From positions 62,001 through 126,000 of the IMG/VR virus record IMGVR_UViG_3300042558_004148: 64,000 nucleotides of DNA; one strand, written 5' to 3'. Shown piece by piece: positions 20,152 through 51,753 of the stretch (its first letter is position 1; every line of letters starts with the position of its first letter). The notes beneath the pieces are model-generated. The model saw only the letters and a list, made by a program, of their open reading frames with translations, was not told the origin of the DNA and searched no databases. Position numbers and translations under genes: made by a program.

Positions 20152-23100
20152 ATGGCAGATATAAGACTTAAGTTTTTCAATAAGGAGGGTAATCCATTAA
20201 ATTTCGATTATATTGGACCAACCGGAGCTAATCCTTTAGATTCCAAATTTACATACCGTACATCCATATCGGGTGCTAGTAATCCTGGTGATCTTGATAT
20301 CACAGAATTTCCAACATATTATAATTTCTTATTCAATGCTGAGGATCTTAATGCATTTGATATGACCTCATGGTATACTGAAGCTGTTTATTGCTTAGAT
20401 AGAGGTACCGAAATATATCTTGAAGGATCTGTTGCTGGTCAGAATGACTTCAGAGGAAAAATATCAGCTGTTAATCTGTTAGGTAACCAATTAACGATAA
20501 CTATACCTAGTGACTATTATTCTGGACAAAGTATAATCAGTCCAGATAATCAGATATACTTTACCACACCTTATAAAAATAGACCCGGTGGATATTTTAA
20601 GGGAAATATTTATTTTGATCCGGTATCTGCTAATCTATACGAGAACGAGCAAATATTTGTTGTACAGGAATTTTATAACGTAACTACATCACAAATTACA
20701 TATGGACTTCCTCATACCGGCGCAACAGGAGCTACTGCTTCACCACAATGGAGAAGTAGATGGTACAATGATAATTATGGCGAAACTGACGTTTCGGAAA
20801 TAATATTCACTTATTCAATATCTGATCAATTGGATGGTGGTGATGGTGAGCCATTAATAGTTAGCTACCCTAACATGATTTTTGATGTTGATGTTGATCC
20901 TAACGATTTCTATTCTAATGGATACGTCAATACAACAACTTCATCCATTGATTCCAGTGCACTCCCAATAAATGTTGCCTTAAATGGACCAGAGGGTGCG
21001 GAAAATATTTATGAGAGAAAACTTATAATTGATGATATATCAACTGGAACACCAGAGAAAATATTGGAGGTTGATTACTATGGACAAATAATAGGTGAGG
21101 ACGAGAGATTTAAAGTGCTTTTAGCAAATCTGGGGAGATCTTTTTATAATAGTGATTCAGTTATACTTAGAGATCATGATCCTGCAGAACCTTTACCTAA
21201 TTACTTAGAGATAAACGAGAAGAGAAAAGAGCTTATGGTAGCTGGTGAGGAAATATTTCCTTATATTGGTAGTTATAAGGGTCTTATTAATGCTCTTAAG
21301 TTTTTTGGTTATCAGGATCTTAGAATAAAAGAATACTGGTTAAATCTTAAATATAATGGACTAAGAGTAGAATCGCCTATTCAGCAGAATAAGAATTTTT
21401 TAAATGCTATTAATAAACAGCAATCGCAGGGATATAATATGTCATATCAGATTGGTGATATATTGGACAACCCTAATTCTGGTAAATATAAGCTTACTCA
21501 AACCTACGGACCTAATAAAAATGGAGAATATGTTCTGGATGTTACATCGGAGGATACATTAGTACCAAGTAGAACATACAAAAAAACGTCACTATTTGGA
21601 CTTTATTATGATCTTAATAAAGTAACCGGTGAGGAAGACGAATTTAATTTACCGATAGTAGAGGACGCTTTTAAATTCACACAAGAGGAAGTACTTATTA
21701 AAATATTTGCTCTGAAGGAAAGATTGAAGAGGGATTATCTACCATTAAACGCCAGAATTATAGATATAACTGGTGAGGGTATTTATTTTGGTGTATATAA
21801 TACCAAATCCTGGACTGATATAATGGGAAGATCCGATTTTGATTCAGGCTTCGAGTTTGATTTCTATCCTAATCCGGATTTCGGTTTTTTAGAAGATCTA
21901 AGAAACTTTTCCACACGACCATTAGCTGGTGCTATACAAAGTCCTAGTTCATATAATAACAATTATTCTTCAACTGTTCAGTTTCTAGGTGGTACTGGAA
22001 GTGCCATTTATTTTAGTGGAAATCTACCGAATGGATCTACTGGACCTAATCCTATATTAAACCTATACATAGGTCAAACATACGAATTTAGCGTTTCCGA
22101 TACTTCCACCTATGGTTATGATCTTATAATTACAACCGATCCGAATTTAACACAGATAGATCCACTCGGAATAATTAATAATGGTGCAACCGGAGGTAAT
22201 TCAATTACATGGTACGTAGAACCTAGCCAAACTTCACCAGTATATTATTATTCTTCGGTAAATCCTTCATTATTGCTGGGTACTATTAATATACTACCCC
22301 CTATATTATCTGATTTAGGAAACATAGTGAATCCGCTAGATTCACAACAAATTTATAATAGCCAACAGAATCAATCGATGTTAAGTGCTATAGATAATTT
22401 CTATAAGCTTAAGCAGGAGGGGAAAATAATAGAATTGGGTGACGATAAATACGATCCTGTTGCATACATAGATCCAAATACTGGACAGCAGTACGACGTT
22501 CCTATTGGAATGCCAGTAATACTTGAACTATTTCCTGATATTTGGACATGGAACGAACTTAATACTAGCTGGGATTCCATAATGATACCTGCATATCGGG
22601 TAGGCGATAGAGTTGAGGTTCCATCTGTCCCATCATTCGGTACAGTTGTTGGAGTTAGTTACTCGACGGGCCAATATAATGTCCTTCTAGATCCACCTTA
22701 CAACATAACGACACAGTTTGGTGAGATGGAACTATTTGCAACAACCCAGGTATTTTTATTATTAACTTGGAGTAATATAGATTTTTCGAATGCGATGGAG
22801 ATAGAGTGGATAGTCGATAAAACCACCACTCAGTCAGGATCGCCTTATAATTTCAATTTTAGAGGTCCTATAGCGGACTTTTATAAAATGGCACACTTCT
22901 TACCATACAGCGGAGATTATAAGATTACGTGCAATGTATATGATGCCTTTAATGCTAAAAGCACTGTCATTAAGAATTCTATAATCAAGGTTCAACCAAA
23001 AACCATAGATATCGATTCTTGGACTAGATACAGAGAGGTTGAAAATTATATATGGGATAATGTTGATCGAGGATGGGACTCATATAAATCAATATGGGAA

Positions 23101-24912
23101 TATCCTGCAGAGGGAGATAGTATAGAGGTTCTAGAAAAAACAATACCTTCTGAGATTCTGAAATTTGCTACGTATGGGAATAAAGCCGAAGAGGGTCAGA
23201 GTTTATATGTTAAAACTAATCTAGATCCTGTCGGAGCAACCGGTGAGATATTATTATCTCAGAATGTTGTAGCGATAGATGAGATATATTCACTTCAGAT
23301 ATTTACTGGTCAATACGGATCAGCCACGGTATCTACCATAACACCTCATGGACTAAATGATGGTGATGAATTAACAATAATAGGAAGTATACCTGAAATA
23401 GATGGTAGATGGACAGCAAATATAGTTTCCCCTACTGTATTTACTATACCTTCCGTAATTTCAAATTCATGGAACGGTGTTGTTCTCGAGACAACCCCGG
23501 TAAATAGATATGTTATAGATCCAACTATATACACGACACAAAAAATTACTGGAGCTGGTTTAATAAAGGTCTATGTAAATAATAGAGAAATTGGAAGTGC
23601 TGATGCAGGTGACACATTATATCACACTGCAAATGCAATAACTTCTTCGATAAACTCACTAAGAACATACCCGGACTATTTTGCATCTTGTCTGAATCCT
23701 AGTACGGATCCTGTCTCTATTATAATATATGCTCCTGATGAATTAGGAGCCGATCAGAATGGTGTTCCGCTATCTGCTACTGTAACGGGAACATTATCAC
23801 TAAGTTCCATATCTGGAACTCTGGAGAATGGAGTAAGTCCTTCCGAAACATATGTTTATTGGTCTGAAAATTCAGAAATCTACCCCAATGATAATCTAAG
23901 ATTTTGGGGAACTAAAAATCTGGACTGGCAAATATTTAATGAGACTAGCTGGAATGATGGATATGCACATAGCTGGTATGATTTCGAATTTAATAACGAT
24001 TGGTTAGGTGGATATGAATTACATACAATATTACCCGGTGACCACGTCAAAGTAAGTACTGGTAATTCAACATACCCGTTCCCAGTTGGTGTTACATTAA
24101 CCAGTCCTGGAAGTTCGATGACTGTACAAGAAGTTGCTGATCAATTAAATAGTTCTGGCGAAACGCATATAACTAATTTTTACTATAGACCTATACCTAG
24201 CGATACCGGATCATTAAGCACAATAACCGGTCCTATTAATCTGGATCTTACTAATGCGTCGGTCCCTGTTAGTACATACCCAGCTCCGCCTTCACTAATA
24301 GGAGGTAGTAATGTATTGATACCTAATTTCGGTTACACTGGAGGTACTCCTATAACAACAACGTCTACGACAACGACGACAACAATAGCTCCTACCACTA
24401 CGACAACCACGACTACGACAACCACGACGTCGACAACAACAACGACCACAGCGGCACCTACAACGACTACAACAACGACCATAGATCCTTGTTTACTTGC
24501 TGGTAATGCTGTAATGATTTATCCGACTACGACAACCACGACGTCGACAACAACAACAACAACGGTACCCATAGGACAAGTTATTATGAATAATCTAGAT
24601 AATACCGGAACTATTGAGGATGTGCAGGTGAATTCGAATTCTATTCTGGTAAGTCCAGGAACATTCCCGGTATTACCAAACACAACCGGTGTAGGCAGTT
24701 ACGGATACGGGATACCAGGACTTTCCCAGATAGAAGTAAGTGTTGGTGCGGTGACAATGTATACGGCCGTAAATCTATCATTAAGTACTGGATATACAGA
24801 TTGTCTTTTACTTGATCCGTTTGCAGGGTTCGTAGTATTCTCGATGGTAGATTTATCAACAGCACCAACTATAACAATAACACTAGAACAGCAAGGAACC
24901 GCGTGTGCATAA
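20152..24912 (+). CDS. Large baseplate wedge protein, gp7-like, with PKD-like segments and a C-terminal mucin-like Thr tract
   Basis: IGSYKGLINALKFFGY motif typical of gp7/P2 gpI-like wedge proteins; position after gp6; poly-Thr near the C-terminus. Confidence 0.65.
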   Translation: MADIRLKFFNKEGNPLNFDYIGPTGANPLDSKFTYRTSISGASNPGDLDITEFPTYYNFLFNAEDLNAFDMTSWYTEAVYCLDRGTEIYLEGSVAGQNDFRGKISAVNLLGNQLTITIPSDYYSGQSIISPDNQIYFTTPYKNRPGGYFKGNIYFDPVSANLYENEQIFVVQEFYNVTTSQITYGLPHTGATGATASPQWRSRWYNDNYGETDVSEIIFTYSISDQLDGGDGEPLIVSYPNMIFDVDVDPNDFYSNGYVNTTTSSIDSSALPINVALNGPEGAENIYERKLIIDDISTGTPEKILEVDYYGQIIGEDERFKVLLANLGRSFYNSDSVILRDHDPAEPLPNYLEINEKRKELMVAGEEIFPYIGSYKGLINALKFFGYQDLRIKEYWLNLKYNGLRVESPIQQNKNFLNAINKQQSQGYNMSYQIGDILDNPNSGKYKLTQTYGPNKNGEYVLDVTSEDTLVPSRTYKKTSLFGLYYDLNKVTGEEDEFNLPIVEDAFKFTQEEVLIKIFALKERLKRDYLPLNARIIDITGEGIYFGVYNTKSWTDIMGRSDFDSGFEFDFYPNPDFGFLEDLRNFSTRPLAGAIQSPSSYNNNYSSTVQFLGGTGSAIYFSGNLPNGSTGPNPILNLYIGQTYEFSVSDTSTYGYDLIITTDPNLTQIDPLGIINNGATGGNSITWYVEPSQTSPVYYYSSVNPSLLLGTINILPPILSDLGNIVNPLDSQQIYNSQQNQSMLSAIDNFYKLKQEGKIIELGDDKYDPVAYIDPNTGQQYDVPIGMPVILELFPDIWTWNELNTSWDSIMIPAYRVGDRVEVPSVPSFGTVVGVSYSTGQYNVLLDPPYNITTQFGEMELFATTQVFLLLTWSNIDFSNAMEIEWIVDKTTTQSGSPYNFNFRGPIADFYKMAHFLPYSGDYKITCNVYDAFNAKSTVIKNSIIKVQPKTIDIDSWTRYREVENYIWDNVDRGWDSYKSIWEYPAEGDSIEVLEKTIPSEILKFATYGNKAEEGQSLYVKTNLDPVGATGEILLSQNVVAIDEIYSLQIFTGQYGSATVSTITPHGLNDGDELTIIGSIPEIDGRWTANIVSPTVFTIPSVISNSWNGVVLETTPVNRYVIDPTIYTTQKITGAGLIKVYVNNREIGSADAGDTLYHTANAITSSINSLRTYPDYFASCLNPSTDPVSIIIYAPDELGADQNGVPLSATVTGTLSLSSISGTLENGVSPSETYVYWSENSEIYPNDNLRFWGTKNLDWQIFNETSWNDGYAHSWYDFEFNNDWLGGYELHTILPGDHVKVSTGNSTYPFPVGVTLTSPGSSMTVQEVADQLNSSGETHITNFYYRPIPSDTGSLSTITGPINLDLTNASVPVSTYPAPPSLIGGSNVLIPNFGYTGGTPITTTSTTTTTTIAPTTTTTTTTTTTTSTTTTTTAAPTTTTTTTIDPCLLAGNAVMIYPTTTTTTSTTTTTTVPIGQVIMNNLDNTGTIEDVQVNSNSILVSPGTFPVLPNTTGVGSYGYGIPGLSQIEVSVGAVTMYTAVNLSLSTGYTDCLLLDPFAGFVVFSMVDLSTAPTITITLEQQGTACA
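24355..24564 (+). repeat. Poly-Thr (ACN)n coding tract, 46 Thr in 70 codons, with an internal exact 34-bp duplication
   Basis: Translated directly; cgactacgacaaccacgacgtcgacaacaacaac occurs at 24410-24443 and 24524-24557. Confidence 0.95.
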
Positions 24913-27218: not shown

Positions 27219-28970
27219 ATGGCAGACGTAATACTAGGTATAGAACAGGGGGACATCATTTATTACTATGATACGAGCATAGGTGATGTTGTGCAAAGAG
27301 ATTGGAGTTTCCAAGGTGGAACACCAACCGGTGCTACATCCTATGGACCCGCAGTAACTTATAATGGTGTCAATACAAATGGATATTCCACATCTTTAAC
27401 TGTGACCGACGCAGCAACCGTTGTTGCTACAACTACCAAGAATAATATAATCGTTGTAACTCCGGAAAATATATCTGCCGCAGTAACCGCATCTAATGTT
27501 AATGTTTTAATGGACGATACAGTTTATTATGGTTCTTCAGCTACAGCGGGAAGTGGATTGACCGGATACGTGTGGAGCATACCTGGTCTTGGTGCAACAT
27601 CGGGAATATATTTAAGTAATGTAACATATGCAAACTTGGATTGGTATAATCTGGCTAATACTTACGTAGGCTCTGTTAATTCAGCATATGTTGCTACCGC
27701 TACTTTAACTGTTACTAGTAATGTGGGTAACGTGGTAAACTCAAGTACGAATGTTACATTCTATAAAATGGGACCTGCTGAGGGATTCTATTATAATGAC
27801 TTATATGGGGCAACTGCTAGTGGACCTTATTATACACCATCAGTAACAGCATACACTTCTAATGATATAGGTCTTGGTGGATCTGGTTTAGTTATAAAGA
27901 TTGATCAAGCATCCAGTTTATATGCACCTATAAATAATTTATATTCACATTCAACTGACGAGGTTGCATATTATTTGCCAAATAGTTCCGATGTATATAC
28001 TAGTATGGATCCGATTAGACTTAGATTAATAATAAACAAGAACGCGTTTATTATTATGGGAGCTGGCGTTAATCCTAATTCACAATTTAGTACAGGTAGC
28101 TATATATTAGCTGGAGGTATAAACACCACCCTGCAAGATAATTTATATCTAACTGATTATACGACAACGGGAACATCCTTAACTTTCTATAATTTAAAAA
28201 CATCAAGGGGATGGACAAACGGGGCCATTAATAAATTTTTGGAGAATAAGTATTATTTATCTGCATCATCCAAGCATGCTGATGGTATATCGTATCTTGT
28301 AGCAAATACTGAGATGTACTTATCATCATATTATAGCATAGATTGGACTGGTGGATATACAATAACCCTTGGTACTAGGCCTGGTGTAGCTATACCTTCA
28401 TCCAGGTTATTTTTCACTAAGTTCGGCGTTGTAATAAATGTTAATGTTAATGTTAATGTTTATAGAGAAGGAAGTGATAACCTAATAGGCTCATATAACG
28501 TTGTGATAAGTTCCGGTGGCGGTGGAGGTATTGGAAATAGTCCCGATACTCTTTTAATAACAGCGAATGATGCAGGATATGGATCTGGTTCAGGTTTAGC
28601 CAGTATATTTAATTCAACAACATCTTCAACAACATTTGCCAATAATATATTATTCGAGGCATCAAGATTCTATTGTCCATTCGAGAATGTAACGGATACT
28701 CCCATCTTTCAGGGAATTGCAGTTCATATAACTGATCCTTTACATTCGGCAACCGGACTTTATATAGGCAGAGTGGAAATAGTATGGGATGCTTCATATC
28801 TATCTGACGTAAATGGTCTAGGACTAACGTCCGGCCCATTAACATACCCATTTGCAAGTGACACCGGTAGTTCATTTACCGGTATGAGGTTAAAAGTTGG
28901 ATATCCCAATAATGCAGTAAATCATACTAATTATAAAAAGGGATGGGAAATAGGCGGATCAATAGCATAA
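27219..28970 (+). CDS. PKD-domain (Ig-like) putative virion/fibre protein
   Basis: RDWSFQGGTPTGATSYGPAVTY...YSTSLTVTD is a classic PKD pattern; a second PKD-like unit follows (YVWSIPG...TATLTVTS). Confidence 0.7.
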   Translation: MADVILGIEQGDIIYYYDTSIGDVVQRDWSFQGGTPTGATSYGPAVTYNGVNTNGYSTSLTVTDAATVVATTTKNNIIVVTPENISAAVTASNVNVLMDDTVYYGSSATAGSGLTGYVWSIPGLGATSGIYLSNVTYANLDWYNLANTYVGSVNSAYVATATLTVTSNVGNVVNSSTNVTFYKMGPAEGFYYNDLYGATASGPYYTPSVTAYTSNDIGLGGSGLVIKIDQASSLYAPINNLYSHSTDEVAYYLPNSSDVYTSMDPIRLRLIINKNAFIIMGAGVNPNSQFSTGSYILAGGINTTLQDNLYLTDYTTTGTSLTFYNLKTSRGWTNGAINKFLENKYYLSASSKHADGISYLVANTEMYLSSYYSIDWTGGYTITLGTRPGVAIPSSRLFFTKFGVVINVNVNVNVYREGSDNLIGSYNVVISSGGGGGIGNSPDTLLITANDAGYGSGSGLASIFNSTTSSTTFANNILFEASRFYCPFENVTDTPIFQGIAVHITDPLHSATGLYIGRVEIVWDASYLSDVNGLGLTSGPLTYPFASDTGSSFTGMRLKVGYPNNAVNHTNYKKGWEIGGSIA

Positions 28971-28984
28971 TTAAAAAGATATAA

Positions 28985-40200: not shown

Positions 40201-40893
40201 AATATATGGAACGGAACATTCTCAGCTGTTACAGGAGGAACCCCTAACGGAGGTGGTAATATATCGGAATTCTGTATATCTACCGCTCATCCATATTTAA
40301 TATCAATAGGTGCACAGTCTGCTTTTGATACGTACGAGAATCTCGTTAAGCCATATTCGGCTACGAACAAGATATATCCACCTTTTAGACATACGCAAAC
40401 TTTCTGGGGAGATACCAGTCTGGATTTCTATTGGGTTCAACAAACATATAGAGAACCTATAACATTTGCAGCGGGTGCTACCGCTTCCAGAGACGATAGA
40501 ATGTACCCTGATAAATTAGGATTTAATTCGAATGATGAATTCCTTATAGGTAAATATTCATGTGGCGCATATTTATATCTGGGACCAACAAATTCATCAT
40601 CTCTTCAGGTGGAGGGTACAACTTCGATATCTGTTAAGCCGCTATTAAATGGTGATTCCAATGCAATAAATGTTCCTCTAATTTTCCAATTCAGACCGGT
40701 AGATAAAGCAGGTTATATCGGAGGATGGAGAAAATCAGGTAATCTTTCAAATATAACATACACTAAAAAGATTGGTGTTGATATACAAGTTAAGAATGAG
40801 GATCAATTCTCATTTGATGTACAAATTACGGGATCGTATAAAAATGACACGTTGGTTGCTCCAAATTTTGATAGCGGTTTAACCTCAGTATAA
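37258..40893 (+). CDS. Large putative structural protein (coiled coils plus Ig/FN3-like beta domains)
   Basis: 1211 aa, preceded by TATAAATA at 37237-37244. Confidence 0.6.
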   Translation: MAGTQNSISSLLAQFLRLQKNSLEILNGLNEAAVSTNDTVSIEVLDEAGLPKNANIPSYGYLRGEIQRIDNNIKSLAGIGENSSTVRNPDGTYSQVFKVNTLKEPSRLVNLTVPSTFAVKDNWFFESFLSPLLYININVTGQISDNADRIMVKRIIANTTTDAQKEYFDLQLKGRNDLSYESFIQLLDDNGIGYFVDEDIVQLPLRTIRYIGDFGVLSYYDDTTTRNDQFGNPVQQIRRNYKLDKLNYTDTVTNVIDGKTLNVKDKVATQDGSLYEITSIDNDQASIQAKRVSGYQPIQIGAKSLSISSTDFGARLVQVNVGYNERQGIFFKTIDDNFNIVSATWSTGVVFWSSELQTKNSDGEIVTLENYYLNEVADLGKVFLGAAKENKITAIQGLKPDAPLVTTDSFKVVQINRQVTQSTSIKVVDDKLNLKTSLKSEIDSLDSAINDARLELNTGLAGNNSVSGRNFITAADDAGDFGRRSGIFGSNISTSPRGVNIQSIRANLNSLIDERTKKVQLYASLVDEVSVLVKDVPQIVTPPKYRVRGFWPIPAPKEDPQTGKQQVIQFSVRYRYLSDSGAAQPSDQIEFVDNDGLRKNAAFSNWTEYKTEIRKKVYDSNKGVYVWADEITSDSDVQNINQLDIAITKGERVEIQISSISEAGWPENPQISDYSESVTVTFPDDLSVNGIADTLVTNNEDAAVVKVQRNLDAQGLPSHLSQQFTSGDKTYYHDAVGISSGFYNTAGGVINLFDKLVELQNQVSLLSAQITQAKGTLEVYVVDSSNNKIKVSRGSVVKITAGFFNDIYSNPLTTDAGKIASSTYSIQLFNAKASAVELASIIPGGLSQKAPATIAPQTYPTGYDDNLRYGDCPISITSLTIADSSIVNNAYFRQAPPFASANSYAQYIYPRYKSVGYDQQLYNGGSLGSSFSSNFSASYAYDGGLSTTNFGISGTYPQNGTLMIPYSPSVTPSTVAGATASNIWNGTFSAVTGGTPNGGGNISEFCISTAHPYLISIGAQSAFDTYENLVKPYSATNKIYPPFRHTQTFWGDTSLDFYWVQQTYREPITFAAGATASRDDRMYPDKLGFNSNDEFLIGKYSCGAYLYLGPTNSSSLQVEGTTSISVKPLLNGDSNAINVPLIFQFRPVDKAGYIGGWRKSGNLSNITYTKKIGVDIQVKNEDQFSFDVQITGSYKNDTLVAPNFDSGLTSV

Positions 40894-43900: not shown

Positions 43901-46382
43901 AGGAACGGACTCTAGAGGAAATTTATATAGATTAAATTCAACACCAGCCTTTTCACCAACTAACTTTTCGCCTAGTTTAGATAGGAACGAATCTGATTCC
44001 CGATACCTTACCCATGAGTGGCTAATATTAGAGAAGCCACCTAGAGATTTTCCGATAAGTGAGATGAAAAATCAGAATAGCTATTTACCAGGTATGGTTG
44101 ATCTAGATATGGCTAGAAGCTCTGATCCAGCGGATGCTCTGTATCTGTCGTCCGTATTTACTGTGGATCCTTCTGACTATTCACCAGAATATAGGGATCT
44201 AAGTTCATATACTAAGGAATTATTTACACCTTTTAGTTTTAATGAATCTAGTGGATATTATGAAACATTATTTAGGGGAATAAAAGTTGTATTGAAGAAA
44301 AGATCAAATTTATCAAATTCAAATGCCGATTCTCTTGATAAATATATTAGATTATACAGAGGTTATGAAGATTATAAATTCTCTGCTATTATTAGGGTTG
44401 TAGATGAGAATTCAACATCAATACAATCACCGGTATCTTATGAAATAATAGAGAATGAACAACAGAAATTTGTTTTGTTCGTATGTTACGTTCTTATTAA
44501 CGATTATAAGTCACAGGAGCTTGGTTATTCGGGATTGACCGGTGGAGATCCTATATTGGATTATACACTTTTATATTCCCTTAGTAATAAGGAGAAGTTA
44601 AATTATCCTCTTGTTAATAACGAACCATTTTATAAAATAGGTGACATCAAATTAAGTGCTGCATTGGACTTATCGCTATCATCTGGTAGTGTGGTAAATA
44701 CGACCGCTGTACCTGGCATAATTAATTCGATATTAAATCCTGATTATGATACTGACCTTAGAGAGGAAATAAACACAATATTCTCTCCCAATACTGCAGG
44801 TGCAACAGCTGGACCAAGTCCTATAGGTGCCGGTAGTTTCTATGTAAATTCCATAAATTCAACATATCCCTGGCCGATTGGCGTTGGACCTAGCTATATA
44901 GAATTTGGTAAAATTGCAACGGGTGGCGCGGAATATACATTTGATATACAATTCTCTGCATCTGATCCAGTCACAGTGCCAGTGGGGCCTTCTTCGGTTT
45001 ATAAAAATCAGCCGGTCTTTCAAGTTGAAGGAGGTGAGGAGTATTATAATTTCATATTAAAAAGAACATCAGCTGCTGATATATTAAGCAGAATAAACGG
45101 AAGTTCTCCCTATATAAAATATAAAACTTATTACTGGGATCCTGTTTTACTAACAACAAAAGAATCATTAAATTCATTTGAGTTGTATATGGAAAAACCA
45201 TCCAGGCTATATAAGGGTAATGGATCAAGAACAACCAAATTTTATGGTGGGCCTCAGACAATAGGTGAATCTGTTCCGACATCATATATAATACAACCTA
45301 ACCAGGACCTTCCGTCCTCCTTACTGAGATACTCTGGTGGATATTCACCTTTATTCAGAAAGGTTGTGTATTTTGATTATGATAAGACCGATACCATAAG
45401 CGGTGATAATAGTATAGATTTATCATTCAGAAACTGCAATTTCGCTCCTAATAAAGAATATTTTGGAATTCTTAGAAATCTTCCATTTACTAAGGTTGAT
45501 AAGGGCAATAATATATTAAGTCTGAGTAAAGATCTGCCTGAGGGTCCGGTATATCCATTGGTTGGCCAATCTCCAATATGGAAAAAGAATTTCAATATAT
45601 TCTCTTCAAGTTGGGATCCTGGATACTATGACCAATTCAATGGCCCAACCACATATAATCAGGTTGCTGGAACAAGAAGCATGAAGGAAAATAAATCTTT
45701 CCTTGCTTCCAAAATTATGAAAACCCCGGGTAACTTTGATTTCAGTAACTATATAACATTAGAGATATCGAGAACTTCCGGATCAACAAATATAAATGAT
45801 ATAAATAACGCAATACTTGGATATAGTAAACCAGTCCAGAATATATCTCCATCTGATTCAGGTATTGGTATAGGAAATGTTGGACCTTACCTATCTGGTG
45901 TTGATTATAATAAATTGGATATATCTATATTTCCGAATGCTGAAATTATATGGCAATATTTTCCATTGGTTAATAAAATAAGCGGTATAATTAGACTTGA
46001 TAGGATGTTGAGAAGATATCTTCTTAATTCTGGTATAAAACAAACGTTCATAGACAATATAATATCAGATTTTGGAGTGGGTAATCCTGATTCAATAGAC
46101 GATGATGTTAATGACTATATAGATCTTAACGTTTCCCCTCTATTTCAGGGAAATGTATTTGATCTTTTTGTTAATAAAACTTCTCAATCGTCCGGATCAC
46201 AAATAGTTGATTATGAGGTTAGAGGTGATATAAATCAATCGGAAAGATTTAAAATGGGATACTATCCCGATAGTAATTATAAATTAACTAGAAATACGGA
46301 TTTAATTTATAATTTTGAGTATAATCTGGAGAAAAGCTATAACTATTCAATATTATTTAACCTAGGAATTATTAAAATTTAA
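40914..46382 (+). CDS. Very large putative structural (fibre/baseplate) protein
   Basis: 1822 aa, aromatic- and Ser/Asn-rich, within the structural block. Confidence 0.6.
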   Translation: MAEAKLFDYNSSFSVVRTNPKLTGNLRITVGSNGSVSFNSMDANRILSNDRFKNFNITGENPFALDVYNFFDKGQLASDIIFQTARFTRGEFQAVNQFSEQYDFFYGSGASALADKNYNESFSYFAPLWINSEIPDYFVIFKVPGPLSYSYSDNQTIISDGIKYKLVQNYDSEVSFRISYGNDASGNPVYYSAGEIFNGSSLYSNYTIIEGSGIVVVFDELANIDLVDDVETLFKNKILPNATAIKTFDLTENSKIGKYIRSIFNDKKFKKSPVDVSWGPSSYTYFNGVSIKDGIYSRKGEILSDYFASDSSDSMIDFESYITSGFSRNGIISPNLLNLEFLFDDDDSDIYTINRYMGFYVSRNDLASLRLNGDFFYKYRNIEGNDDLPKPSRNSFGYYYDSTTYPITAESGIMLFYENGSGFLPGSNDTNILDSNKLYYITDKDSNFYSLSRSEFYGGSTGPNYGPYDYSTGLFSATGSTGSTSGNVVIQNKKTDLHNFTGTSNKVASIPAKNADSPGRAYCEVEFLKKSDLVNPIYFKLYWPNGSLYDGSEKYDLVESADLSAIIPWVDGSFYSTGNTHYFNAYGDDLSKIASSFSNIIKNIDQVTVESGVNLNSSVIRLRDSGTFGNDLYSISIFGNYSDFESRYKGIWDNTSSYSVNDIVKYDGYYYTTASIINAPSSGNFNLNPISAGWNKYDTFTYPGYVKINGIDAYEISGTINFTGGTRYSGNRLIFGSSYEGFVNVNDFVVTKTGKSRVMEVSKYTDEPVRDTQTNIVTGFDNFTYSRVAILEDEFAEVDLGSSNSFNSYKSVDLNIGVFSFFDMKEFDFDFFTSNYSYTPTAETYKYYQIQPGVTGSINNGIPYLVKRGQIIYNNVQYDQGSIFYGTGGITLFTSANPDQKDLIVFPAQYSTVTYNSSTTNYGSDIGYNVDLDAFNGFIGIQSLTPSSLNSSASKLEVFNRGKLSSEYDYLEENYTTSRANISRIVPYINKWAYTSGTDSRGNLYRLNSTPAFSPTNFSPSLDRNESDSRYLTHEWLILEKPPRDFPISEMKNQNSYLPGMVDLDMARSSDPADALYLSSVFTVDPSDYSPEYRDLSSYTKELFTPFSFNESSGYYETLFRGIKVVLKKRSNLSNSNADSLDKYIRLYRGYEDYKFSAIIRVVDENSTSIQSPVSYEIIENEQQKFVLFVCYVLINDYKSQELGYSGLTGGDPILDYTLLYSLSNKEKLNYPLVNNEPFYKIGDIKLSAALDLSLSSGSVVNTTAVPGIINSILNPDYDTDLREEINTIFSPNTAGATAGPSPIGAGSFYVNSINSTYPWPIGVGPSYIEFGKIATGGAEYTFDIQFSASDPVTVPVGPSSVYKNQPVFQVEGGEEYYNFILKRTSAADILSRINGSSPYIKYKTYYWDPVLLTTKESLNSFELYMEKPSRLYKGNGSRTTKFYGGPQTIGESVPTSYIIQPNQDLPSSLLRYSGGYSPLFRKVVYFDYDKTDTISGDNSIDLSFRNCNFAPNKEYFGILRNLPFTKVDKGNNILSLSKDLPEGPVYPLVGQSPIWKKNFNIFSSSWDPGYYDQFNGPTTYNQVAGTRSMKENKSFLASKIMKTPGNFDFSNYITLEISRTSGSTNINDINNAILGYSKPVQNISPSDSGIGIGNVGPYLSGVDYNKLDISIFPNAEIIWQYFPLVNKISGIIRLDRMLRRYLLNSGIKQTFIDNIISDFGVGNPDSIDDDVNDYIDLNVSPLFQGNVFDLFVNKTSQSSGSQIVDYEVRGDINQSERFKMGYYPDSNYKLTRNTDLIYNFEYNLEKSYNYSILFNLGIIKI

Positions 46383-46384
46383 TT

Positions 46385-47941
46385 ATGCCAAATATAAATA
46401 TACAATCTTTAGAATATTCGGACTCCCAATCGGAAATGTTCGATAAGGTAAATCTTAATTTTGATGAGATTATCGAAATACATGGGGGATCGCAAGGTAG
46501 GATAGGACCTACTGGTGGTGATGGAGCCATCGGTGATAGAGGTAAGCCTGGACCTACTGGAAATACAGGAGTCAGAGGAAATAGATGGTTTATTGATATT
46601 TCTCAGCCTTCCGGGCCAGGTGACACTGTTATTTATGGTGATTATTGGGTTAATAGAGATTCTGGTATTATTAATATATTTACTTCATTGGGATGGCAAC
46701 CTACTGGATATAGCTTATCCGACGGAGATTCCATATTTAAAAATTCGGGGTCCATATTCTCCACTGGTATTACCGGATCAGCAATATCATTAAATCAGAT
46801 AACACCATCCGATTATCTGGTCATAGTAGCCGATAAAACACCAGGTTCTGGGGTTTTAAATCAGAATCTAGCTAAATTTTTATTATCGACTGATACCACA
46901 GTAAATGATTCGCCAATATTGGAATTCTCAAAAACTAATATTGAGGATGGAAATATAGCTGACTATTCACAACATCCAATATTTAGATGGAATAATTTTA
47001 CTCCGACCGACGATGGCTTGGTATTAGAAATACCAGGGGGATCATTTATAATAGGAGCATCTGGTGGATCTGATATAAAATTCAATGAATTTATAATGAA
47101 TTCACCAGGTACAATATCATTTAATTATGGTACTACCTCCGGATCAGGAATATACTCCACTGGTGGATTTGAGATTAATGCTCCCAGCGGACAATTTAGT
47201 ATACTGAGTTCAAATATAAGCATTACCGGGGGTACATCCTCAATATCAGCTCCGGTTCAATTAAATCCAAGCTTACCTGATGGTGTTTTTAGTACTTATT
47301 TATATAGCGGTGGAACCGCACCAGCACTAAGAACTACCAGATCTGGAGATACCTTTTCTACTCTATCCCATTCCGTTTATAATATTAGTTTGGAGTCATC
47401 AAATGGAGGACAAAGAGACTTCTTTATAGATACAAGGGGTAAAATTAGAACCAAGAAAACTGAAACAGGTATATCATATGCTAATACTACCACTGATGTA
47501 ACGAGTGCTATAACATCTCCATATACAGCAAATACTAACTGGTATATGTTAACCAGGACAGGAACTCCGATAGATTCATCGGTCCTACAGGATGGTAACA
47601 CTATGGTCATAAACCCAGTTGTTCCTACCAGTGGATTTATAGGGATTGGTATTTATACAGGATCCGATTATTCATTAGGTACTACTGGTGGTATTAATAG
47701 AGGTGAATCTATAGATATAAATGTTCTTGTAAGTCCCAATGATCTGGTATATCCCAGTAACGGAATAACATTTATAGGAAAGGGAACTACCTCCGGTAAC
47801 ATTACTAGCTTGGTTGAACTTTCTAATATAGCATCCTCATTGGATCTAACCATAGCTAGAGGTGTTACCGGAGATTATATAACGGTTTTTTATAGATCAT
47901 ATGGAATTAATGGCGGATCTGGAGGATCTTTTACTATTTGA
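46385..47941 (+). CDS. Collagen-repeat tail fibre paralog A
   Basis: DS-x5-DKVNLNF N-terminus followed by 11 G-X-Y triplets ending at Trp. Confidence 0.75.
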   Translation: MPNINIQSLEYSDSQSEMFDKVNLNFDEIIEIHGGSQGRIGPTGGDGAIGDRGKPGPTGNTGVRGNRWFIDISQPSGPGDTVIYGDYWVNRDSGIINIFTSLGWQPTGYSLSDGDSIFKNSGSIFSTGITGSAISLNQITPSDYLVIVADKTPGSGVLNQNLAKFLLSTDTTVNDSPILEFSKTNIEDGNIADYSQHPIFRWNNFTPTDDGLVLEIPGGSFIIGASGGSDIKFNEFIMNSPGTISFNYGTTSGSGIYSTGGFEINAPSGQFSILSSNISITGGTSSISAPVQLNPSLPDGVFSTYLYSGGTAPALRTTRSGDTFSTLSHSVYNISLESSNGGQRDFFIDTRGKIRTKKTETGISYANTTTDVTSAITSPYTANTNWYMLTRTGTPIDSSVLQDGNTMVINPVVPTSGFIGIGIYTGSDYSLGTTGGINRGESIDINVLVSPNDLVYPSNGITFIGKGTTSGNITSLVELSNIASSLDLTIARGVTGDYITVFYRSYGINGGSGGSFTI

Positions 47942-47968: not shown

Positions 47969-49639
47969 ATGACAGAGTTACAGTTACTTAGAATAGAAGA
48001 AGGGGATTCTCAGAATAATATAATTGATAAAATTAATTATAATTTTACCGGTATAATTGACTTCGGTGGAGGCCCTTATGGAAAGATAGGTAAAATTGGA
48101 CCTGATGGAAATAAGGGAGCTACTGGCCCGGTGGGTTCATACGGGGATCTCGGAAGGAGAGGTAGTATATGGAACATTGGTCCGACACAACCCCAAGGAA
48201 ATAACGTATATTTATCAGATTATTGGATGAACACTGATGAATTTAATAATATATACGAGTTCAACGGAAATTCTTGGGCATTGAGTGGCATAAACGTAAG
48301 ATCCAGGGATTTATTTTATGTTGATGGTCCAGTAATAACATCATCGGGCAACAGTACTAAAAGGGGTTATTACATATCATCTTCTCTTCCCTTAAGTTAT
48401 ACAACAGTAATTAGTGACGTCCAGATAACAAGTGGATCAAGCACCAGTTCCCCTAATGCGATACCAAATCCGCAGTATAGTAAATTCGTTATATCCACCG
48501 ATGGACTTAATCCGAATAAGAATATACTGGAGTTTAGTAAACACCAGTATTCTTCGAATTTAGCATTTACACAAAAAACACCCAGATTTTATTGGACTCA
48601 GGGAGCGACATCAGCAAGAGGAAATTATGGACTTAGCTTGCTTAGTGGATATAGATTCGATATAAACACTTCTTCCGATTTATATATTGCTTCCATTTCG
48701 TCAGGTATTAATTTAACCTCAACTGGAATCAATATGACAACGCCTAGTACTTTACCATTCGGTATAAATGCAACATCGAGAATTACATTTAATTTTTCGA
48801 CAGGTTCAGCCATATTCTCGACCAGTAATATAAGTTTCTCAGGTGGATTATTTTCTTTTAAAACCCCGATATATTCTTCTACCCAAAGTAATAGTGTTAT
48901 TCCAACGATGAGGTTGGCTTCAGCGTCGGCTAATACTGGAAATATTAGATATGTTTATCCATCCACTGGAACTAAGCTAATAAATCTATTTAGAAGTGTT
49001 CAATCTGGATCTATTATAAACTATGTAGATGGGTCTGGATTATTTTATTTTAATAAAAGAGTTAATTCCATACAGAATGCACAATCTGTAACTGCAACAA
49101 CGACATCGGTAGTTGCAGGAACACAGATAGATTGGGTTACAGTTCTTCCCTCTATCTCATTAACGTCAACCGGCAATTATGTATGGTCGAATAATGGAAT
49201 GGATTTAGTTGTAACAAAACCAACATCTACTGCAAACCAGAGAGGATTATGTTTATGGACTCCTGCCACTGGTGGAGCACCTGGTGGAAATGGTGGGTGG
49301 CTAAAATTATTGGAAAATGGTGAATCGATAAACTTTAGAGTTCATAGTGGCAATTCAGGAACTTCTAGTACCGATAATTTTAAATTCATTGGACTAAATA
49401 CTTCAAATAATCAGGGAGATGCACCTAATAATACACCATCTTCAAACTATTCATTTATTAATTTATCTGCATCTAATGGGGTTGGAGCATCTACAATAGA
49501 CATAACAATAGTTAATATACAAGGAACCGGATCAACTGCGGGTAACAGAAGATGGTTCAAAGTATATTATTCAGCATGGGGAGGTGGATTAACAACAAAC
49601 CAATGTGGTGTACTAACAACATATAATGCAACAGCCTAA
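47969..49639 (+). CDS. Collagen-repeat tail fibre paralog B
   Basis: GDSQNNIIDKINYNF followed by 11 G-X-Y triplets ending at Trp. Confidence 0.75.
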   Translation: MTELQLLRIEEGDSQNNIIDKINYNFTGIIDFGGGPYGKIGKIGPDGNKGATGPVGSYGDLGRRGSIWNIGPTQPQGNNVYLSDYWMNTDEFNNIYEFNGNSWALSGINVRSRDLFYVDGPVITSSGNSTKRGYYISSSLPLSYTTVISDVQITSGSSTSSPNAIPNPQYSKFVISTDGLNPNKNILEFSKHQYSSNLAFTQKTPRFYWTQGATSARGNYGLSLLSGYRFDINTSSDLYIASISSGINLTSTGINMTTPSTLPFGINATSRITFNFSTGSAIFSTSNISFSGGLFSFKTPIYSSTQSNSVIPTMRLASASANTGNIRYVYPSTGTKLINLFRSVQSGSIINYVDGSGLFYFNKRVNSIQNAQSVTATTTSVVAGTQIDWVTVLPSISLTSTGNYVWSNNGMDLVVTKPTSTANQRGLCLWTPATGGAPGGNGGWLKLLENGESINFRVHSGNSGTSSTDNFKFIGLNTSNNQGDAPNNTPSSNYSFINLSASNGVGASTIDITIVNIQGTGSTAGNRRWFKVYYSAWGGGLTTNQCGVLTTYNATA

Positions 49640-49641
49640 AT

Positions 49642-51753
49642 ATGCACTTCAATACTAAATATATTTTTCAAGGTGACTCAAAAAGTGAAGCCTTAGCTAA
49701 GATTAATTACAACTTTGATCAGATAGTTTCTTTTGGTGTTGGTCCTAATGGTCACCAGGGTGCTAAAGGAGCTACCGGAATATATGGGCCAGCTGGATTC
49801 AAGGGAATTAGCGGAACTACTGGTAATAGAGCAAGTAAATGGTATAGCCAATCAGCTCAACCTGCCGGAAGTCAACAATATGATTTATGGATAGATTCCA
49901 ATACTGCGGACGGAGTTGTTAATCAGAAGGGCTCAACCGGTTCTTGGACCGATACTGGATATAGACTTTTTAGTTCACTATACTTTAAATCTTATGAGTT
50001 TATACAGGGACCGGCCGGGGTAACAGATAAATATGTCATTGGTCTAAATAATGTCGGTGCATCAGCAGCATATACCAACCTGGTAATAAGTGATTCTGAT
50101 ATGAGTATATCTGATATAAATCCAAACAACTCCAAGGTATTAATTTCTACTGATGATCAGATAAATTTGCCAGTGATGGGATTTTCTAAGTCCGGTGCTA
50201 TATCGAACTCGAGACCATCTTTCTATTGGAAAAATACTGGAATTCTGGGTGATTTAGAATTCAGATCAGGTGGAATATTTAGGATAAGCTCGTATCTTGA
50301 TACTTCTATAAATACCGGCACTTCAAGATTAAATATATCAGGTAACAGAATAAATTCAACCTCCCTTAATTATAGCTTATCTGGTGTAGGTGATTTTACT
50401 ATAGCATCGAATAACACGATTGGTGCAGGAACTTTCTTTAATGTTAATGCATCAAATTTGGTCTTCAATCAGCTAGCTTATGATCATCTTGGTTCAATTG
50501 TAATATCCGCTGCAACTGGATCTTATTTATTAAATAATACACCTACAACGGCATTTGCGGGAAGTAATATCGAGCTGGAAGTAAGTAGCTTAAATAACTC
50601 GATATTTGAATTTACCGGTATAGGTGGAGGTAATATACTTTCTGCTAAACCTCAGGGAACAGTTTCAAGTGGTAATTTTTCGCAAACTATATTTGGGTCA
50701 ACGGGAGGAGCCACTGGTGGAACTGGTGGTCCATATTCATATCATGTCAGAAGACTACAGCAAATAAGACAAAACACCATAAATGTAAATAATGTTACCT
50801 TATATCGTGCTACCTTTGGCTCAACGGCAAATCTAACAAATGTTTTTGATATAAGAAATCTCACATTTTGGGAATCTGATGTTATAGTGGTTACTCCGCT
50901 TTCCTATACTTCGGCCGGCGGTGTTTATTTATATGTTCCAGCCGATTATACGCAGAGCATATATCCAATATATTCCTATAATAGATCCAGAACATTTAGA
51001 GTGATGCTAGATAATACTGAAACCAATCCAACGGGTAGAAATATACTTGGTCTTATTGTAGACTTTAGTCAATTTATTTCCAGTATAGGTACGGTGGTAA
51101 AAGTTTACGTCCAATTCCCTTCGACAACATGTCAATATGTTGATCTTACCTGGTTAGCATACGCTAATGCAAATAACGCTAATACCAGGTTATTCTGGAA
51201 AACATGCGATGGCAGGGGAGGATATTTAGATCTGACTAATCTATATTCAGTTGGTGTAGAACCACCTCCATCTAGTGGAACTGCTGGGGGTACCGTTCCT
51301 ACTAGCGGTGGATCTTCTCCGGGTGGAGGTGGATGTCCGACTCCTGATATGCCTATTATGATAAGTCCGGAATTAAGTATATTTGCTGGTGATCTTCAAA
51401 TCGGGGATGAAATATATACCATACATGAAATTAGTAACGAATGGGGTTATTATAAAGTCTCATATATAGAAACTACGATACAGCCTATAGTTTCTGTAAA
51501 TATAGGAGGAAAAATATTAACTGTTTCTGATACGCATAAATTTTTATTAAGTTCGGGAGATTATGTTTCTGTTAGTGAAATTGAAATAGGATCCGAAATA
51601 AAAACGATGAACGGAACTTCAATACTTGAATCAGTGCATGCTATTGGAAATGGTGAGGTACTAAAAATAGAAATAGAAGATGCTCATACATATGTTATTG
51701 ATAGTATCATATCTCATAACAAGATAGTAAGATCATTAACAATTGAACCATAA
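49642..51753 (+). CDS. Collagen-repeat tail fibre paralog C with a C-terminal Hint domain
   Basis: GDSKSEALAKINYNF, 10 G-X-Y triplets plus ASK, then Trp; after a Gly/Ser/Pro linker comes CPTPDMPI (51334)...HTYVIDSIISHNK. Confidence 0.8.
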   Translation: MHFNTKYIFQGDSKSEALAKINYNFDQIVSFGVGPNGHQGAKGATGIYGPAGFKGISGTTGNRASKWYSQSAQPAGSQQYDLWIDSNTADGVVNQKGSTGSWTDTGYRLFSSLYFKSYEFIQGPAGVTDKYVIGLNNVGASAAYTNLVISDSDMSISDINPNNSKVLISTDDQINLPVMGFSKSGAISNSRPSFYWKNTGILGDLEFRSGGIFRISSYLDTSINTGTSRLNISGNRINSTSLNYSLSGVGDFTIASNNTIGAGTFFNVNASNLVFNQLAYDHLGSIVISAATGSYLLNNTPTTAFAGSNIELEVSSLNNSIFEFTGIGGGNILSAKPQGTVSSGNFSQTIFGSTGGATGGTGGPYSYHVRRLQQIRQNTINVNNVTLYRATFGSTANLTNVFDIRNLTFWESDVIVVTPLSYTSAGGVYLYVPADYTQSIYPIYSYNRSRTFRVMLDNTETNPTGRNILGLIVDFSQFISSIGTVVKVYVQFPSTTCQYVDLTWLAYANANNANTRLFWKTCDGRGGYLDLTNLYSVGVEPPPSSGTAGGTVPTSGGSSPGGGGCPTPDMPIMISPELSIFAGDLQIGDEIYTIHEISNEWGYYKVSYIETTIQPIVSVNIGGKILTVSDTHKFLLSSGDYVSVSEIEIGSEIKTMNGTSILESVHAIGNGEVLKIEIEDAHTYVIDSIISHNKIVRSLTIEP

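What the first reader, a model, noticed from the sequence alone, without database searches (positions are those of the whole stretch)
20152..51753. G-x-T-G motif strongly over-represented across virion proteins: a possible modification sequon
Seen: by manual count G-x-T-G (GATG, GVTG, GSTG, GTTG, GLTG, GPTG and others) occurs about 41 times in the 11 structural ORFs from 20152 to 51753 (about 9,800 aa). Twelve are in the 28985 propeller protein and only about 6 lie in collagen segments. A rough expectation from G of about 8.5% and T of about 9% is about 6. Related GAT(A/S) motifs are also frequent. The motifs sit singly in loops of unrelated folds, which fits a recognition signal better than a structural repeat. 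Established: Thr in G-X-T collagen-like repeats of Bacillus BclA is O-glycosylated. Inference: these are acceptor sites for the phage GT.
Basis: partly seen in the sequence, partly recalled or inferred. Interest (0 to 1): 0.65.

Follow-up and report, generated by a model that had tools for sequence, protein, structure and literature searches.

The report
Thr motif G-x-T-G enriched in phage fibres
The tail-fibre proteins of this 373-kb jumbo phage and all its relatives carry about five times too many G-x-T-G tetrapeptides, which is a real protein-level signal that may mark threonine sugar-attachment sites, because the phage encodes protein-type glycosyltransferases, but this is unproven.

Summary
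G-x-T-G occurs exactly 41 times in the 12 ORFs from 20152 to 51753 (10,091 aa). Composition predicts 7.7, dipeptide-preserving shuffles give 12.1±3.3, and local shuffles give about 9. It is the top-ranked of all 8000 a-x-b-c motifs. G-x-S-G is not enriched, and the DNA pattern occurs only in the coding frame. The rest of the genome is at expectation (27 observed, about 23 expected). Fibre blocks of all 29 distinct relatives show 4-9-fold enrichment. Some sites are invariant and many turn over. 81% of sites lie in loops of an AlphaFold model.

No glycosyltransferase lies in the window. Elsewhere the genome encodes:
- a GT-A+TPR enzyme found throughout the clade. It resembles SunS/ThuS and GmaR, and has the same architecture as C. 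difficile SgtA, which O-GlcNAcylates Thr in G-P-T collagen repeats;
- a GT4–TibC-like O-heptosyltransferase–FkbM fusion. A GmhA gene lies in the window.

Enrichment persists in relatives that lack the TibC-like enzyme. Homologues of the GT-A+TPR gene in two other jumbo phages lie 4-7 kb from G-x-T collagen genes.

My best reading, at about 0.4, is a Thr O-glycosylation sequon read by the GT-A+TPR enzyme. The main rival is a purely structural loop motif.

The parts
20152..24912 (+). 1586-aa fibre-block protein (phrog_28177, function unknown). It has 7 G-x-T-G at aa 22, 190, 613, 628, 678, 1028 and 1394, against 1.05 expected. It also has poly-Thr linkers at aa 1402-1471.
   Evidence: In 27 orthologues the mean is 7.9 motifs spread over 51 distinct columns. 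Sites 22, 190 and 613 are kept in 70-85% of them.
27219..28970 (+). 583-aa protein with 1 motif at aa 113, against 0.78 expected.
   Evidence: Orthologues carry 0-6 motifs.
28985..33052 (+). 1355-aa multi-propeller protein, a likely receptor-binding protein. It has 12 motifs at aa 133, 136, 145, 367, 624, 635, 736, 967, 988, 996, 1033 and 1146, against 1.03 expected.
   Evidence: The 120 homologues listed carry 2-19 motifs against about 1.1 expected. The motifs at 133, 145, 367 and 988 are invariant or nearly so, while 78 distinct columns are used overall.
34112..35017 (+). 301-aa Gly/Thr-rich protein with 2 motifs at aa 192 and 235, against 0.75 expected.
   Evidence: Both sites are kept in 72% of 29 orthologues.
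35040..37241 (+). 733-aa protein with 2 motifs at aa 174 and 180, against 0.18 expected.
   Evidence: The sites are kept in 66-79% of orthologues.
40914..46382 (+). 1822-aa protein (phrog_31887) with 4 motifs at aa 459, 479, 853 and 1207, against 0.60 expected.
46385..47941 (+). 518-aa tail fibre with an N-terminal collagen-like run. It has 6 motifs: aa 41, 56 and 59 in the collagen run, and aa 128, 432 and 493 outside it.
47969..49639 (+). 556-aa tail fibre, a paralogue of the previous one. It has 1 motif at aa 50, in the collagen run.
49642..51753 (+). 703-aa tail fibre, also a paralogue. It has 6 motifs: aa 43 and 58 in the collagen run, and aa 97, 352, 356 and 359 outside it.
37258..40893 (+). 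1211-aa protein of the same block (phrog_29329) with no motif here, against 0.48 expected. It serves as an internal contrast.
   Evidence: Orthologues have 0-3 motifs, and one site (AVTG in the query) is G-x-T-G in 66% of them.
56686..57285 (+). GmhA-like D-sedoheptulose-7-phosphate isomerase. It is a sugar-supply gene for the heptosyltransferase system encoded outside the window. It is associated with the finding but is not itself a motif carrier.
   Evidence: Pfam SIS_2 at 2e-21. NCBIfam NF001628 scores 238.7 bits, just under the cut-off of 265.

Best explanation
G-x-T-G, with x small or aliphatic (mostly A, V, S, T or P) and never charged, is one BclA-type collagen triplet (G-X-Thr) closed by the next Gly. 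In this jumbo-phage clade it has been selected at the protein level in the distal, exposed virion proteins. In a few proteins it forms long G-A-T collagen runs. Elsewhere it occurs as single copies in surface loops of unrelated folds.

The most likely function is an acceptor site for Thr O-glycosylation in the infected cell by a phage-encoded protein glycosyltransferase. The best candidate enzyme is the 424-aa GT-A+TPR protein found throughout the clade (genome 72174-73448, outside the window). It has the architecture of C. difficile SgtA, which adds O-GlcNAc to Thr of G-P-T repeats.

Shown: the enrichment, its Thr specificity, its restriction to the fibre block, sheath and collagen proteins, its conservation across the clade, its placement in loops, and the presence and fold class of the enzymes.

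Inferred: that the Thr is modified at all, which enzyme does it, and what the glycan is.
For: (1) The signal is strong and specific: 41 observed against 7.7-12.1 expected, the top-ranked of 8000 motifs, with G-x-S-G at expectation.

(2) It is not a general property of proteins. The other 471 ORFs of the full genome give 27 against 22-24 expected. Two Gly/Thr-rich LamG proteins give 1 against 2.0. The non-collagen ORFs of Tunturi_5 give 29 against 41.

(3) It is a trait of the whole clade. All 29 distinct relatives show 4-9-fold enrichment, and G-x-T-G is their first- or second-ranked motif in 28 of them.

(4) Sites turn over while the count is maintained: 78 columns in the 28985 family and 51 in the 20152 family. 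At variable sites Ser and Thr interchange.

(5) 46 of 57 motif Thr columns fall in coil of the AlphaFold model, against a 51% background (P 3e-6).

(6) The same unit builds collagen runs in this phage. A 212-aa fibre with 22 motifs is made mainly of GAT/GAI triplets.

(7) The GT-A+TPR enzyme is present in 8 of 8 relatives that are at least 90% complete, at 58-80% identity, with an invariant DADD motif. Its best sequence matches are GmaR and ThuS/SunS, and its best fold matches are SunS and ThuS over the full length. SgtA has the same GT-A+TPR layout and glycosylates Thr in GPT repeats (PMC7157674).

(8) Homologues of this enzyme in two independent jumbo phages lie close to G-x-T collagen genes: 4 kb away in Tunturi_5 (66 motifs) and 6.5 kb away in LR756502.

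(9) Poly-Thr, mucin-like linkers occur in two proteins of the block.
Against: There is no direct evidence of any modification.

Several sites are invariant across homologues of 38-85% identity, as invariant as core Trp and Pro residues (G133/T135, G367/T369/G370 and G988/G991 invariant; T990 nearly so). That is more typical of a structural role.

SgtA also accepts Ser in vitro, yet G-x-S-G is never enriched.

The GT-A+TPR gene sits among topoisomerase and ribonucleotide-reductase genes, not among structural genes, so a different substrate is possible.

Tunturi_5 has the enzyme homologue but shows no enrichment of isolated motifs.

Co-occurrence within the clade amounts to one evolutionary event. 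Burial of the Thr residues could not be measured.
Confidence: 0.4

Rival explanations
1. The motif is purely structural. G-x-T-G would be a favoured loop or extended (polyproline-II-like) building block of this lineage's fibre proteins, kept for folding or packing, with no modification.
For: Several sites are invariant in both Gly positions and in Thr. The invariant GATGW lies in the most conserved segment of the 28985 protein. The x position excludes charged and aromatic residues, as a tight loop would. The same triplet forms collagen runs. No modification is shown.
Against: Other beta-rich or Gly/Thr-rich proteins of the same genome, and of other phages, show no excess. A generic structural preference would not be confined to one block of unrelated folds. 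Most sites turn over rather than being fixed. There is no fixed position relative to strands: 48% lie within 4 residues of the next strand, against 47% for background coil residues. Isolated motifs show no Gly periodicity around them.
Confidence: 0.33
2. The motifs are acceptors for the TibC-like O-heptosyltransferase, which is the middle domain of the 959-aa GT4–BAHT–FkbM enzyme. Heptose would come from the GmhA pathway.
For: The enzyme scores 273 bits on TIGR04414, above the cut-off of 200. It matches TibC at E 9e-66 and all four iron-finger Cys are conserved. It lies in the structural module next to the neck and sheath genes. GmhA is in the window. TibC-type enzymes hyperglycosylate strand-loop-strand sites (family name).
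Against: TibC modifies Ser, not Thr (PMC4358343). Two complete relatives with terminal repeats (G005, G016) lack any GT4, GT9 or TibC homologue, yet keep 20-23 motifs against about 5 expected in the same block. Genomes with the enzyme carry giant collagens with Ser at the Y position (G-T-S/G-S-S), which is a more natural substrate. Genomes without it carry G-A-T/G-P-T collagens.
Confidence: 0.07
3. The motif is a recognition or docking element for something other than a glycosyltransferase. Candidates are a fibre-assembly chaperone, another Thr-modifying enzyme such as a kinase, or a trace of module exchange with collagen-coding repeats.
For: The signal is specific to the lineage and to the fibre block. 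The motif is shared with collagen runs in the same genome.
Against: No candidate partner was identified. Twelve bases is too short for homologous exchange, and codons within the motif vary. The ACY bias of the Thr codon is general for Thr-Gly pairs.
Confidence: 0.12
4. The enrichment is an artefact of composition, of repeats, or of a signal at the DNA level.
For: The block is Gly/Thr-rich. The three fibres are paralogues and contain collagen runs.
Against: The signal survives residue, dipeptide and local shuffles. It survives removal of the collagen runs and collapsing of clusters, leaving 30 clusters. The DNA pattern occurs only in the coding frame. The signal is reproduced in relatives with as little as 34-45% identity in the 28985 homologue.
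Confidence: 0.01

Closest known systems
C. difficile SgtA acting on BclA3, and the B. anthracis BclA collagen-like glycoprotein
   Same: A GT-A domain followed by TPR repeats glycosylates Thr in G-P-T collagen triplets, which read G-x-T-G in sequence (PMC7157674). The phage enzyme has the same two-domain layout. The phage also has G-A-T collagen runs.
   Different: Here most motifs are single tetrapeptides in loops of non-collagen folds. The enzyme gene is not next to its presumed substrates in this genome. SgtA also takes Ser. No direct sequence comparison with SgtA was possible, and no activity has been shown.
SunS/ThuS glycocin glycosyltransferases and Listeria GmaR (flagellin O-GlcNAc transferase)
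   Same: These are the best sequence and fold matches of the 424-aa enzyme. They are peptide- or protein-modifying GT-A enzymes with helical repeat domains.
   Different: Identity is only about 15% and the NCBIfam score is far below the SunS cut-off (26 against 350 bits). SunS and ThuS act on Cys or Ser of small peptides, and GmaR acts on flagellin.
TibC/AAH bacterial autotransporter heptosyltransferases (BAHT)
   Same: The middle domain of the 959-aa phage enzyme is a clear family member. It scores above the family cut-off, it has the iron-finger Cys4, and GmhA is present.
   Different: It is fused to a GT4 domain and an FkbM methyltransferase and is encoded by a phage with no autotransporter. 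The known enzymes modify Ser, not Thr. The motif enrichment does not depend on it.
Virion glycosylation in mycobacteriophages, and the three-domain GT-GT-methyltransferase A064R of chlorovirus PBCV-1 (both from my own knowledge, not checked here)
   Same: Virus-encoded glycosyltransferases, sometimes with a methyltransferase, decorate the virus's own structural proteins.
   Different: To my knowledge, no short Gly-flanked Thr sequon has been reported for those systems. The hosts, enzymes and glycans differ.
Glycine-rich motifs of T-even phage adhesins, gp38 (from my own knowledge)
   Same: These are short conserved Gly-rich motifs scattered through a receptor-binding protein with a purely structural role. 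They are a model for the structural rival.
   Different: Those motifs form a polyglycine-II sandwich within one domain. Here the motifs are isolated, require Thr, and are spread over many unrelated proteins.

Membership tests
SgtA-like GT-A+TPR protein O-glycosyltransferase (the candidate enzyme) | N-terminal GT-A (GT2) domain with a DxD motif | tested here: met
   PF00535 scores 35.8 bits against a cut-off of 23.3. D119-A-D121-D122 is invariant in 31 homologues. The fold matches SunS, ThuS and TarP.
SgtA-like GT-A+TPR protein O-glycosyltransferase (the candidate enzyme) | C-terminal TPR-type helical repeats | tested here: met
   phmmer matches TPR proteins over aa 210-330. The AlphaFold model shows helical repeats over aa 209-423, and Foldseek matches consensus TPR and OGT TPR structures.
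SgtA-like GT-A+TPR protein O-glycosyltransferase (the candidate enzyme) | Gene lies next to its G-x-T collagen substrate gene | tested here: not met
   In this genome the gene lies among topoisomerase and RNR genes. The feature is met for homologues in Tunturi_5 (4 kb) and LR756502 (6.5 kb).
SgtA-like GT-A+TPR protein O-glycosyltransferase (the candidate enzyme) | Transfers a sugar to Thr of G-x-T peptides | not testable with these tools
   This needs an enzyme assay or glycoproteomics.
BAHT (TibC/AAH) O-heptosyltransferase | Family profile score above the cut-off, and the iron-finger Cys4 | tested here: met
   TIGR04414 scores 273 bits against a cut-off of 200. The match to TibC is E 9e-66, and all four Cys align.
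BAHT (TibC/AAH) O-heptosyltransferase | Partner autotransporter substrate, with Ser as the acceptor | tested here: not met
   No autotransporter is present. The motif residue is Thr, whereas TibC modifies Ser and not Thr. Enrichment persists without the enzyme.
Collagen triple helix | Long uninterrupted run of G-X-Y triplets | tested here: not met
   Only 6 of 41 motifs lie in runs of 10-11 triplets. 26 have no in-phase Gly beyond the motif itself.
Protein O-glycosylation sequon (generic) | Over-represented in exposed virion proteins, located in loops, and dependent on a hydroxyl residue | tested here: met
   This fits a sequon but does not prove one.
Protein O-glycosylation sequon (generic) | Enrichment tracks presence of the enzyme across lineages | tested here: inconclusive
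   It does not track the TibC-like enzyme. The GT-A+TPR enzyme is in all 8 complete relatives. It is absent from three outgroup phages, which show no strong excess in the stretches examined. Tunturi_5 has the enzyme and a G-x-T collagen but no isolated-motif excess.

The most novel reading that the evidence does not exclude
A clade of 270-435-kb jumbo phages coats its fibres using a minimal four-residue Thr sequon, G-x-T-G. The sequon would be read by a SunS/SgtA-like GT-A+TPR enzyme, both in collagen-like runs and in single loops of unrelated folds. A second, optional system would heptosylate Ser in G-T-S-type collagens. It consists of a TibC-like O-heptosyltransferase fused to GT4 and FkbM domains, a further GT9 heptosyltransferase and GmhA. 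The collagen triplet 'dialect' of a phage would then predict its glycosyltransferase set.
Probability: 0.3. Interest if true: 0.8.

Novelty: new variant of a known kind. Interest (0 to 1): 0.65.

Why it matters
If the motif is a sequon, glycosylation sites on phage receptor-binding proteins could be predicted from sequence alone. Virion glycosylation would then extend to uncultured jumbo phages, far beyond the few cultured examples. It would also supply a compact peptide tag and enzyme pair for glyco-engineering. Glycan coats on fibres bear on host range, on stability in the environment and on immune recognition of phages. Even if the motif proves to be structural, a lineage-specific four-residue building block across unrelated folds is unusual. 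The TibC-type protein heptosyltransferase fusion in a phage is a separate lead that can be tested directly.

Tried and rejected
- **Close relatives in the phage collection.** Megablast and tblastn of the 28985 gene found nothing. Relatives came from the protein collection and from IMG/VR instead.
- **A glycosyltransferase inside the window.** Pfam found none.
- **A DNA-level motif.** Rejected, because the pattern is specific to the coding frame.
- **Thr codon bias (ACY in 35 of 41 motifs).** This is a general Thr-Gly codon-pair effect, not specific to the motif.
- **Hidden collagen periodicity around isolated motifs.** None was found.
- **A fixed position just before beta strands.** No different from background coil residues.
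- **Shared cryptic domains among carrier proteins.** BLAST finds only the N-terminal regions of the three fibres.
- **Dependence on the TibC-like enzyme.** Not seen.
- **Complex prediction** of the GT-A+TPR enzyme with aa 118-165 of the 28985 protein. The result was 'no answer', which is evidence neither for nor against.
- **Solvent exposure of the Thr residues.** It could not be computed, because model coordinates are not released. Only secondary structure was used.
- **Direct comparison with SgtA.** Not done, because no tool-supplied SgtA sequence was available.
- **Length limit of the word search.** The word-based homologue searches used full-length queries, so they saw only proteins of 0.55-1.75 times the query length.
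- **Not used.** The reads tools and the large representative search.


Full report
**What the window is.** The window is the minus strand of bases 91160-155159 of a 217,893-bp virus record. That record is a fragment. Identical sequence lies in three IMG/VR contigs (373,467, 373,485 and 343,544 bp); the 373,467-bp one has direct terminal repeats and is rated complete. A baseplate-wedge gene at 17875-19599 is 26-37% identical to those of Lak phages, other huge phages and Flavobacterium and Tenacibaculum phages. The ORFs from 20152 to 51753 follow it. The last three match tail-fibre families and the others have no named function. The 28985 protein resembles the propeller sensor domains of Bacteroides hybrid two-component systems in both sequence and fold.

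I count exactly 41 G-x-T-G in 12 ORFs totalling 10,091 aa. Twelve are in the 28985 protein and six are in collagen runs of 10-11 triplets. The expectation is 7.7 from per-protein composition, 7.8±2.8 from residue shuffles, 12.1±3.3 from dipeptide-preserving shuffles, and 8.3-9.6 from shuffles inside 12-40-aa blocks. Merging motifs within 15 aa of each other leaves 30 clusters.

**The signal is specific.**
- G-x-T-G is the top-ranked of all 8000 a-x-b-c motifs.
- All other G-x-X-G are near expectation, including G-x-S-G at 9 against 9.25.
- Changing the first Gly removes the excess. G-x-T-A (11 against 3.9) and G-x-T-S (15 against 8.7) are weaker echoes.
- The x position is A, V, S, T or P in 31 of 41 motifs (G or L in 6 more) and is never charged.
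- The DNA pattern occurs 41 times in the coding frame and 0-4 times in each other frame. The ACY bias of the Thr codon is a general Thr-Gly effect. The selection is therefore on the protein.

**Where the motif is found and not found.** The other 471 ORFs of the complete genome hold 27 motifs against 22-24 expected. Baseplate proteins upstream of the block, and two Gly/Thr-rich LamG proteins, show no excess. Outside the block, the excess appears in three places:
- the insertion region of the 1117-aa tail sheath (5 against 0.63);
- a 212-aa collagen-like fibre made mainly of GAT/GAI triplets (22 motifs);
- a low-complexity protein with a signal peptide.

Apart from the N-terminal regions of the three fibres, the carrier proteins share no detectable similarity.

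**Conservation.** The 28985 protein has hundreds of metagenomic homologues. The 120 listed carry 2-19 motifs each against about 1.1 expected. In alignments, the motifs at aa 133, 145, 367 and 988 are invariant or nearly so. Other sites turn over, and 78 distinct columns are used. At the variable sites Ser and Thr interchange. The other families of the block behave the same way. In all 29 distinct relatives, the 24-kb stretch around the gene shows 20-41 motifs against 3-6 expected. G-x-T-G is the first- or second-ranked motif in 28 of them, and G-x-S-G is never enriched. Stretches of three outgroup phages show no strong excess.

**Structure.** An AlphaFold model of aa 100-1200 of the 28985 protein has mean pLDDT 80 and pTM 0.84. 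It is a chain of propeller-like beta domains. Across the family, 46 of 57 motif Thr columns that map to confident parts of the model lie in coil, against a 51% background (P 3e-6). They show no preferred distance to the next strand. Isolated motifs have no Gly periodicity around them. The invariant GATGW lies in the most conserved segment of the protein, yet the model is not confident there. That would fit an interface with another subunit. Coordinates are not released, so burial could not be measured.

**The enzymes.** No glycosyltransferase lies in the window. Two systems lie elsewhere in the genome.

- *A 959-aa enzyme in the structural module, next to the neck and sheath genes.* It joins a GT4 domain, a TibC-like O-heptosyltransferase and an FkbM methyltransferase. 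The TibC-like domain scores 273 bits on TIGR04414 (cut-off 200), matches TibC at E 9e-66, and has all four iron-finger Cys aligned. A further GT9 heptosyltransferase lies two genes away. The window's gene at 56686-57285 is a GmhA-like heptose-pathway isomerase.
- *A 424-aa GT-A+TPR enzyme.* Its best sequence matches are GmaR and ThuS/SunS, and its best fold matches are SunS and ThuS over the full length. It has an invariant DADD motif.

Published work shows that C. difficile SgtA has a GT-A domain followed by TPR repeats. It adds O-GlcNAc to Thr of G-P-T repeats in BclA3 and also accepts Ser in vitro (PMC7157674). TibC modifies Ser and not Thr (PMC4358343).

**Does the enrichment follow an enzyme?** Two complete relatives with terminal repeats (G005, G016) lack any TibC, GT4 or GT9 homologue. 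They still have 20-23 motifs against about 5 expected in the same block. The TibC-like enzyme is therefore not required.

The GT-A+TPR enzyme is present in 8 of 8 relatives that are at least 90% complete, at 58-80% identity. It is absent from the three outgroup phages. That is consistent with the sequon idea, but it amounts to a single evolutionary event.

Beyond the clade, homologues of the enzyme occur in other jumbo phages:
- In Tunturi_5 the gene lies 4 kb from a 1469-aa GPT/GAT collagen protein with 66 motifs. The rest of that genome shows no excess (29 against 41).
- In LR756502 it lies 6.5 kb from a GAT-type collagen protein.

**A side pattern.** The four genomes with a TibC-like enzyme (this phage, G003, G018, LR756501) carry giant collagens with Ser or Asn at the Y position (G-T-S, G-S-S, G-T-N). 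The four genomes without it (G005, G016, Tunturi_5, LR756502) have collagens with Thr at Y in every ORF examined. The sample is small and the cases are partly related.

**Interpretation.** Chance, composition, repeats and DNA-level signals are excluded. Two readings remain.

The sequon reading is supported by:
- the Thr specificity;
- the restriction to exposed distal proteins, while other proteins sit at expectation;
- the turnover of sites with a maintained count;
- the identity of the motif with the BclA-type triplet;
- the poly-Thr linkers in the same block;
- an enzyme found throughout the clade with the same architecture as one known to glycosylate exactly that triplet.

The structural reading is supported by:
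- the invariant sites;
- the tiny, uncharged character of the motif;
- the complete lack of direct evidence for modification.

I put the sequon reading, with the GT-A+TPR enzyme as the reader of the motif, at about 0.4. I put the structural reading at about 0.33, the TibC-like enzyme as the modifier at about 0.07, and other recognition roles at about 0.12.

**Novelty.** Glycosylated G-x-Thr collagen repeats and virion glycosylation are both known. Three things would be new: a four-residue Thr sequon scattered through loops of non-collagen fibre proteins, its conservation across a whole clade of uncultured jumbo phages, and its pairing with SunS/SgtA-like and TibC-like enzymes. My literature searches of the held library found no report of this.

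Noticed in passing
Outside the window: own genome 203687-206566 (L011:687-3566, minus strand) and 207491-208423; window 56686-57285: A 959-aa fusion joins a GT4 domain, a TibC-type autotransporter O-heptosyltransferase (iron-finger Cys4 kept) and an FkbM methyltransferase. It lies in the structural module, a separate GT9 heptosyltransferase lies two genes away, and a GmhA-like isomerase lies in the window. I know of no report of a protein heptosyltransferase of this family in a phage.
   Followed up: partly
Own genome 211578-216152; G001:28050-29609 and 29723-30361; loci L123-L133: The collagen triplet 'dialect' tracks the enzyme set. Four genomes with a TibC-like enzyme carry giant collagens with Ser or Asn at the Y position (G-T-S, G-S-S, G-T-N). 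Four genomes without it have collagens with Thr at Y (G-A-T/G-P-T) in every ORF examined. The sample is small and the lineages are partly related.
   Followed up: partly
Window 24355-24564 (20152 protein, aa 1402-1471) and 25195-25242 (24967 protein, aa 77-92): Long poly-Thr, mucin-like linkers, which explain the T-x-T-T excess. Linkers of this kind are classic O-glycosylation regions in other systems.
   Followed up: no
Window 24967-26166: A 399-aa Thr- and Cys-rich protein with weak Hint / pretoxin-HINT matches at its C-terminus (below the Pfam cut-offs). It may be a self-processing protein, sitting inside the fibre block.
   Followed up: no
Window 28985-33052, aa 354-443: The most conserved segment of the propeller protein, with many invariant aromatic residues plus GATGW, is the part the AlphaFold model is least confident about. 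It may be an attachment or oligomerisation interface.
   Followed up: no
Whole record: The held genome of 217,893 bp is a fragment. The same phage occurs at 100% protein identity in three metagenome contigs; the 373,467-bp one has direct terminal repeats. Relatives range from 270 to 435 kb.
   Followed up: yes
G001:2135-2923, 28050-29609, 29723-30361 (outside the window): Three small fibre-like proteins share a conserved N-terminal domain (R-R-D ... G-E-x-G-Y-E-T-D-T ... K-I-G-D-G). In two of them it is followed by collagen runs of different dialects; the third (262 aa) has no long run.
   Followed up: no
G001:32545-34128 (outside the window): A 527-aa protein with a signal peptide, a (G-S-G-G-T-T)n low-complexity tract, and a C-terminal part that looks by eye like a membrane beta-barrel. 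It carries 9 motifs, all from the repeat.
   Followed up: no
Window 33084-33833 (minus strand): A PhoH-like ATPase gene lies on the opposite strand in the middle of the fibre block.
   Followed up: no
Window 14112-16668: An S1-domain protein and a weakly amidoligase-like protein sit between the baseplate genes. Their function there is unclear.
   Followed up: no
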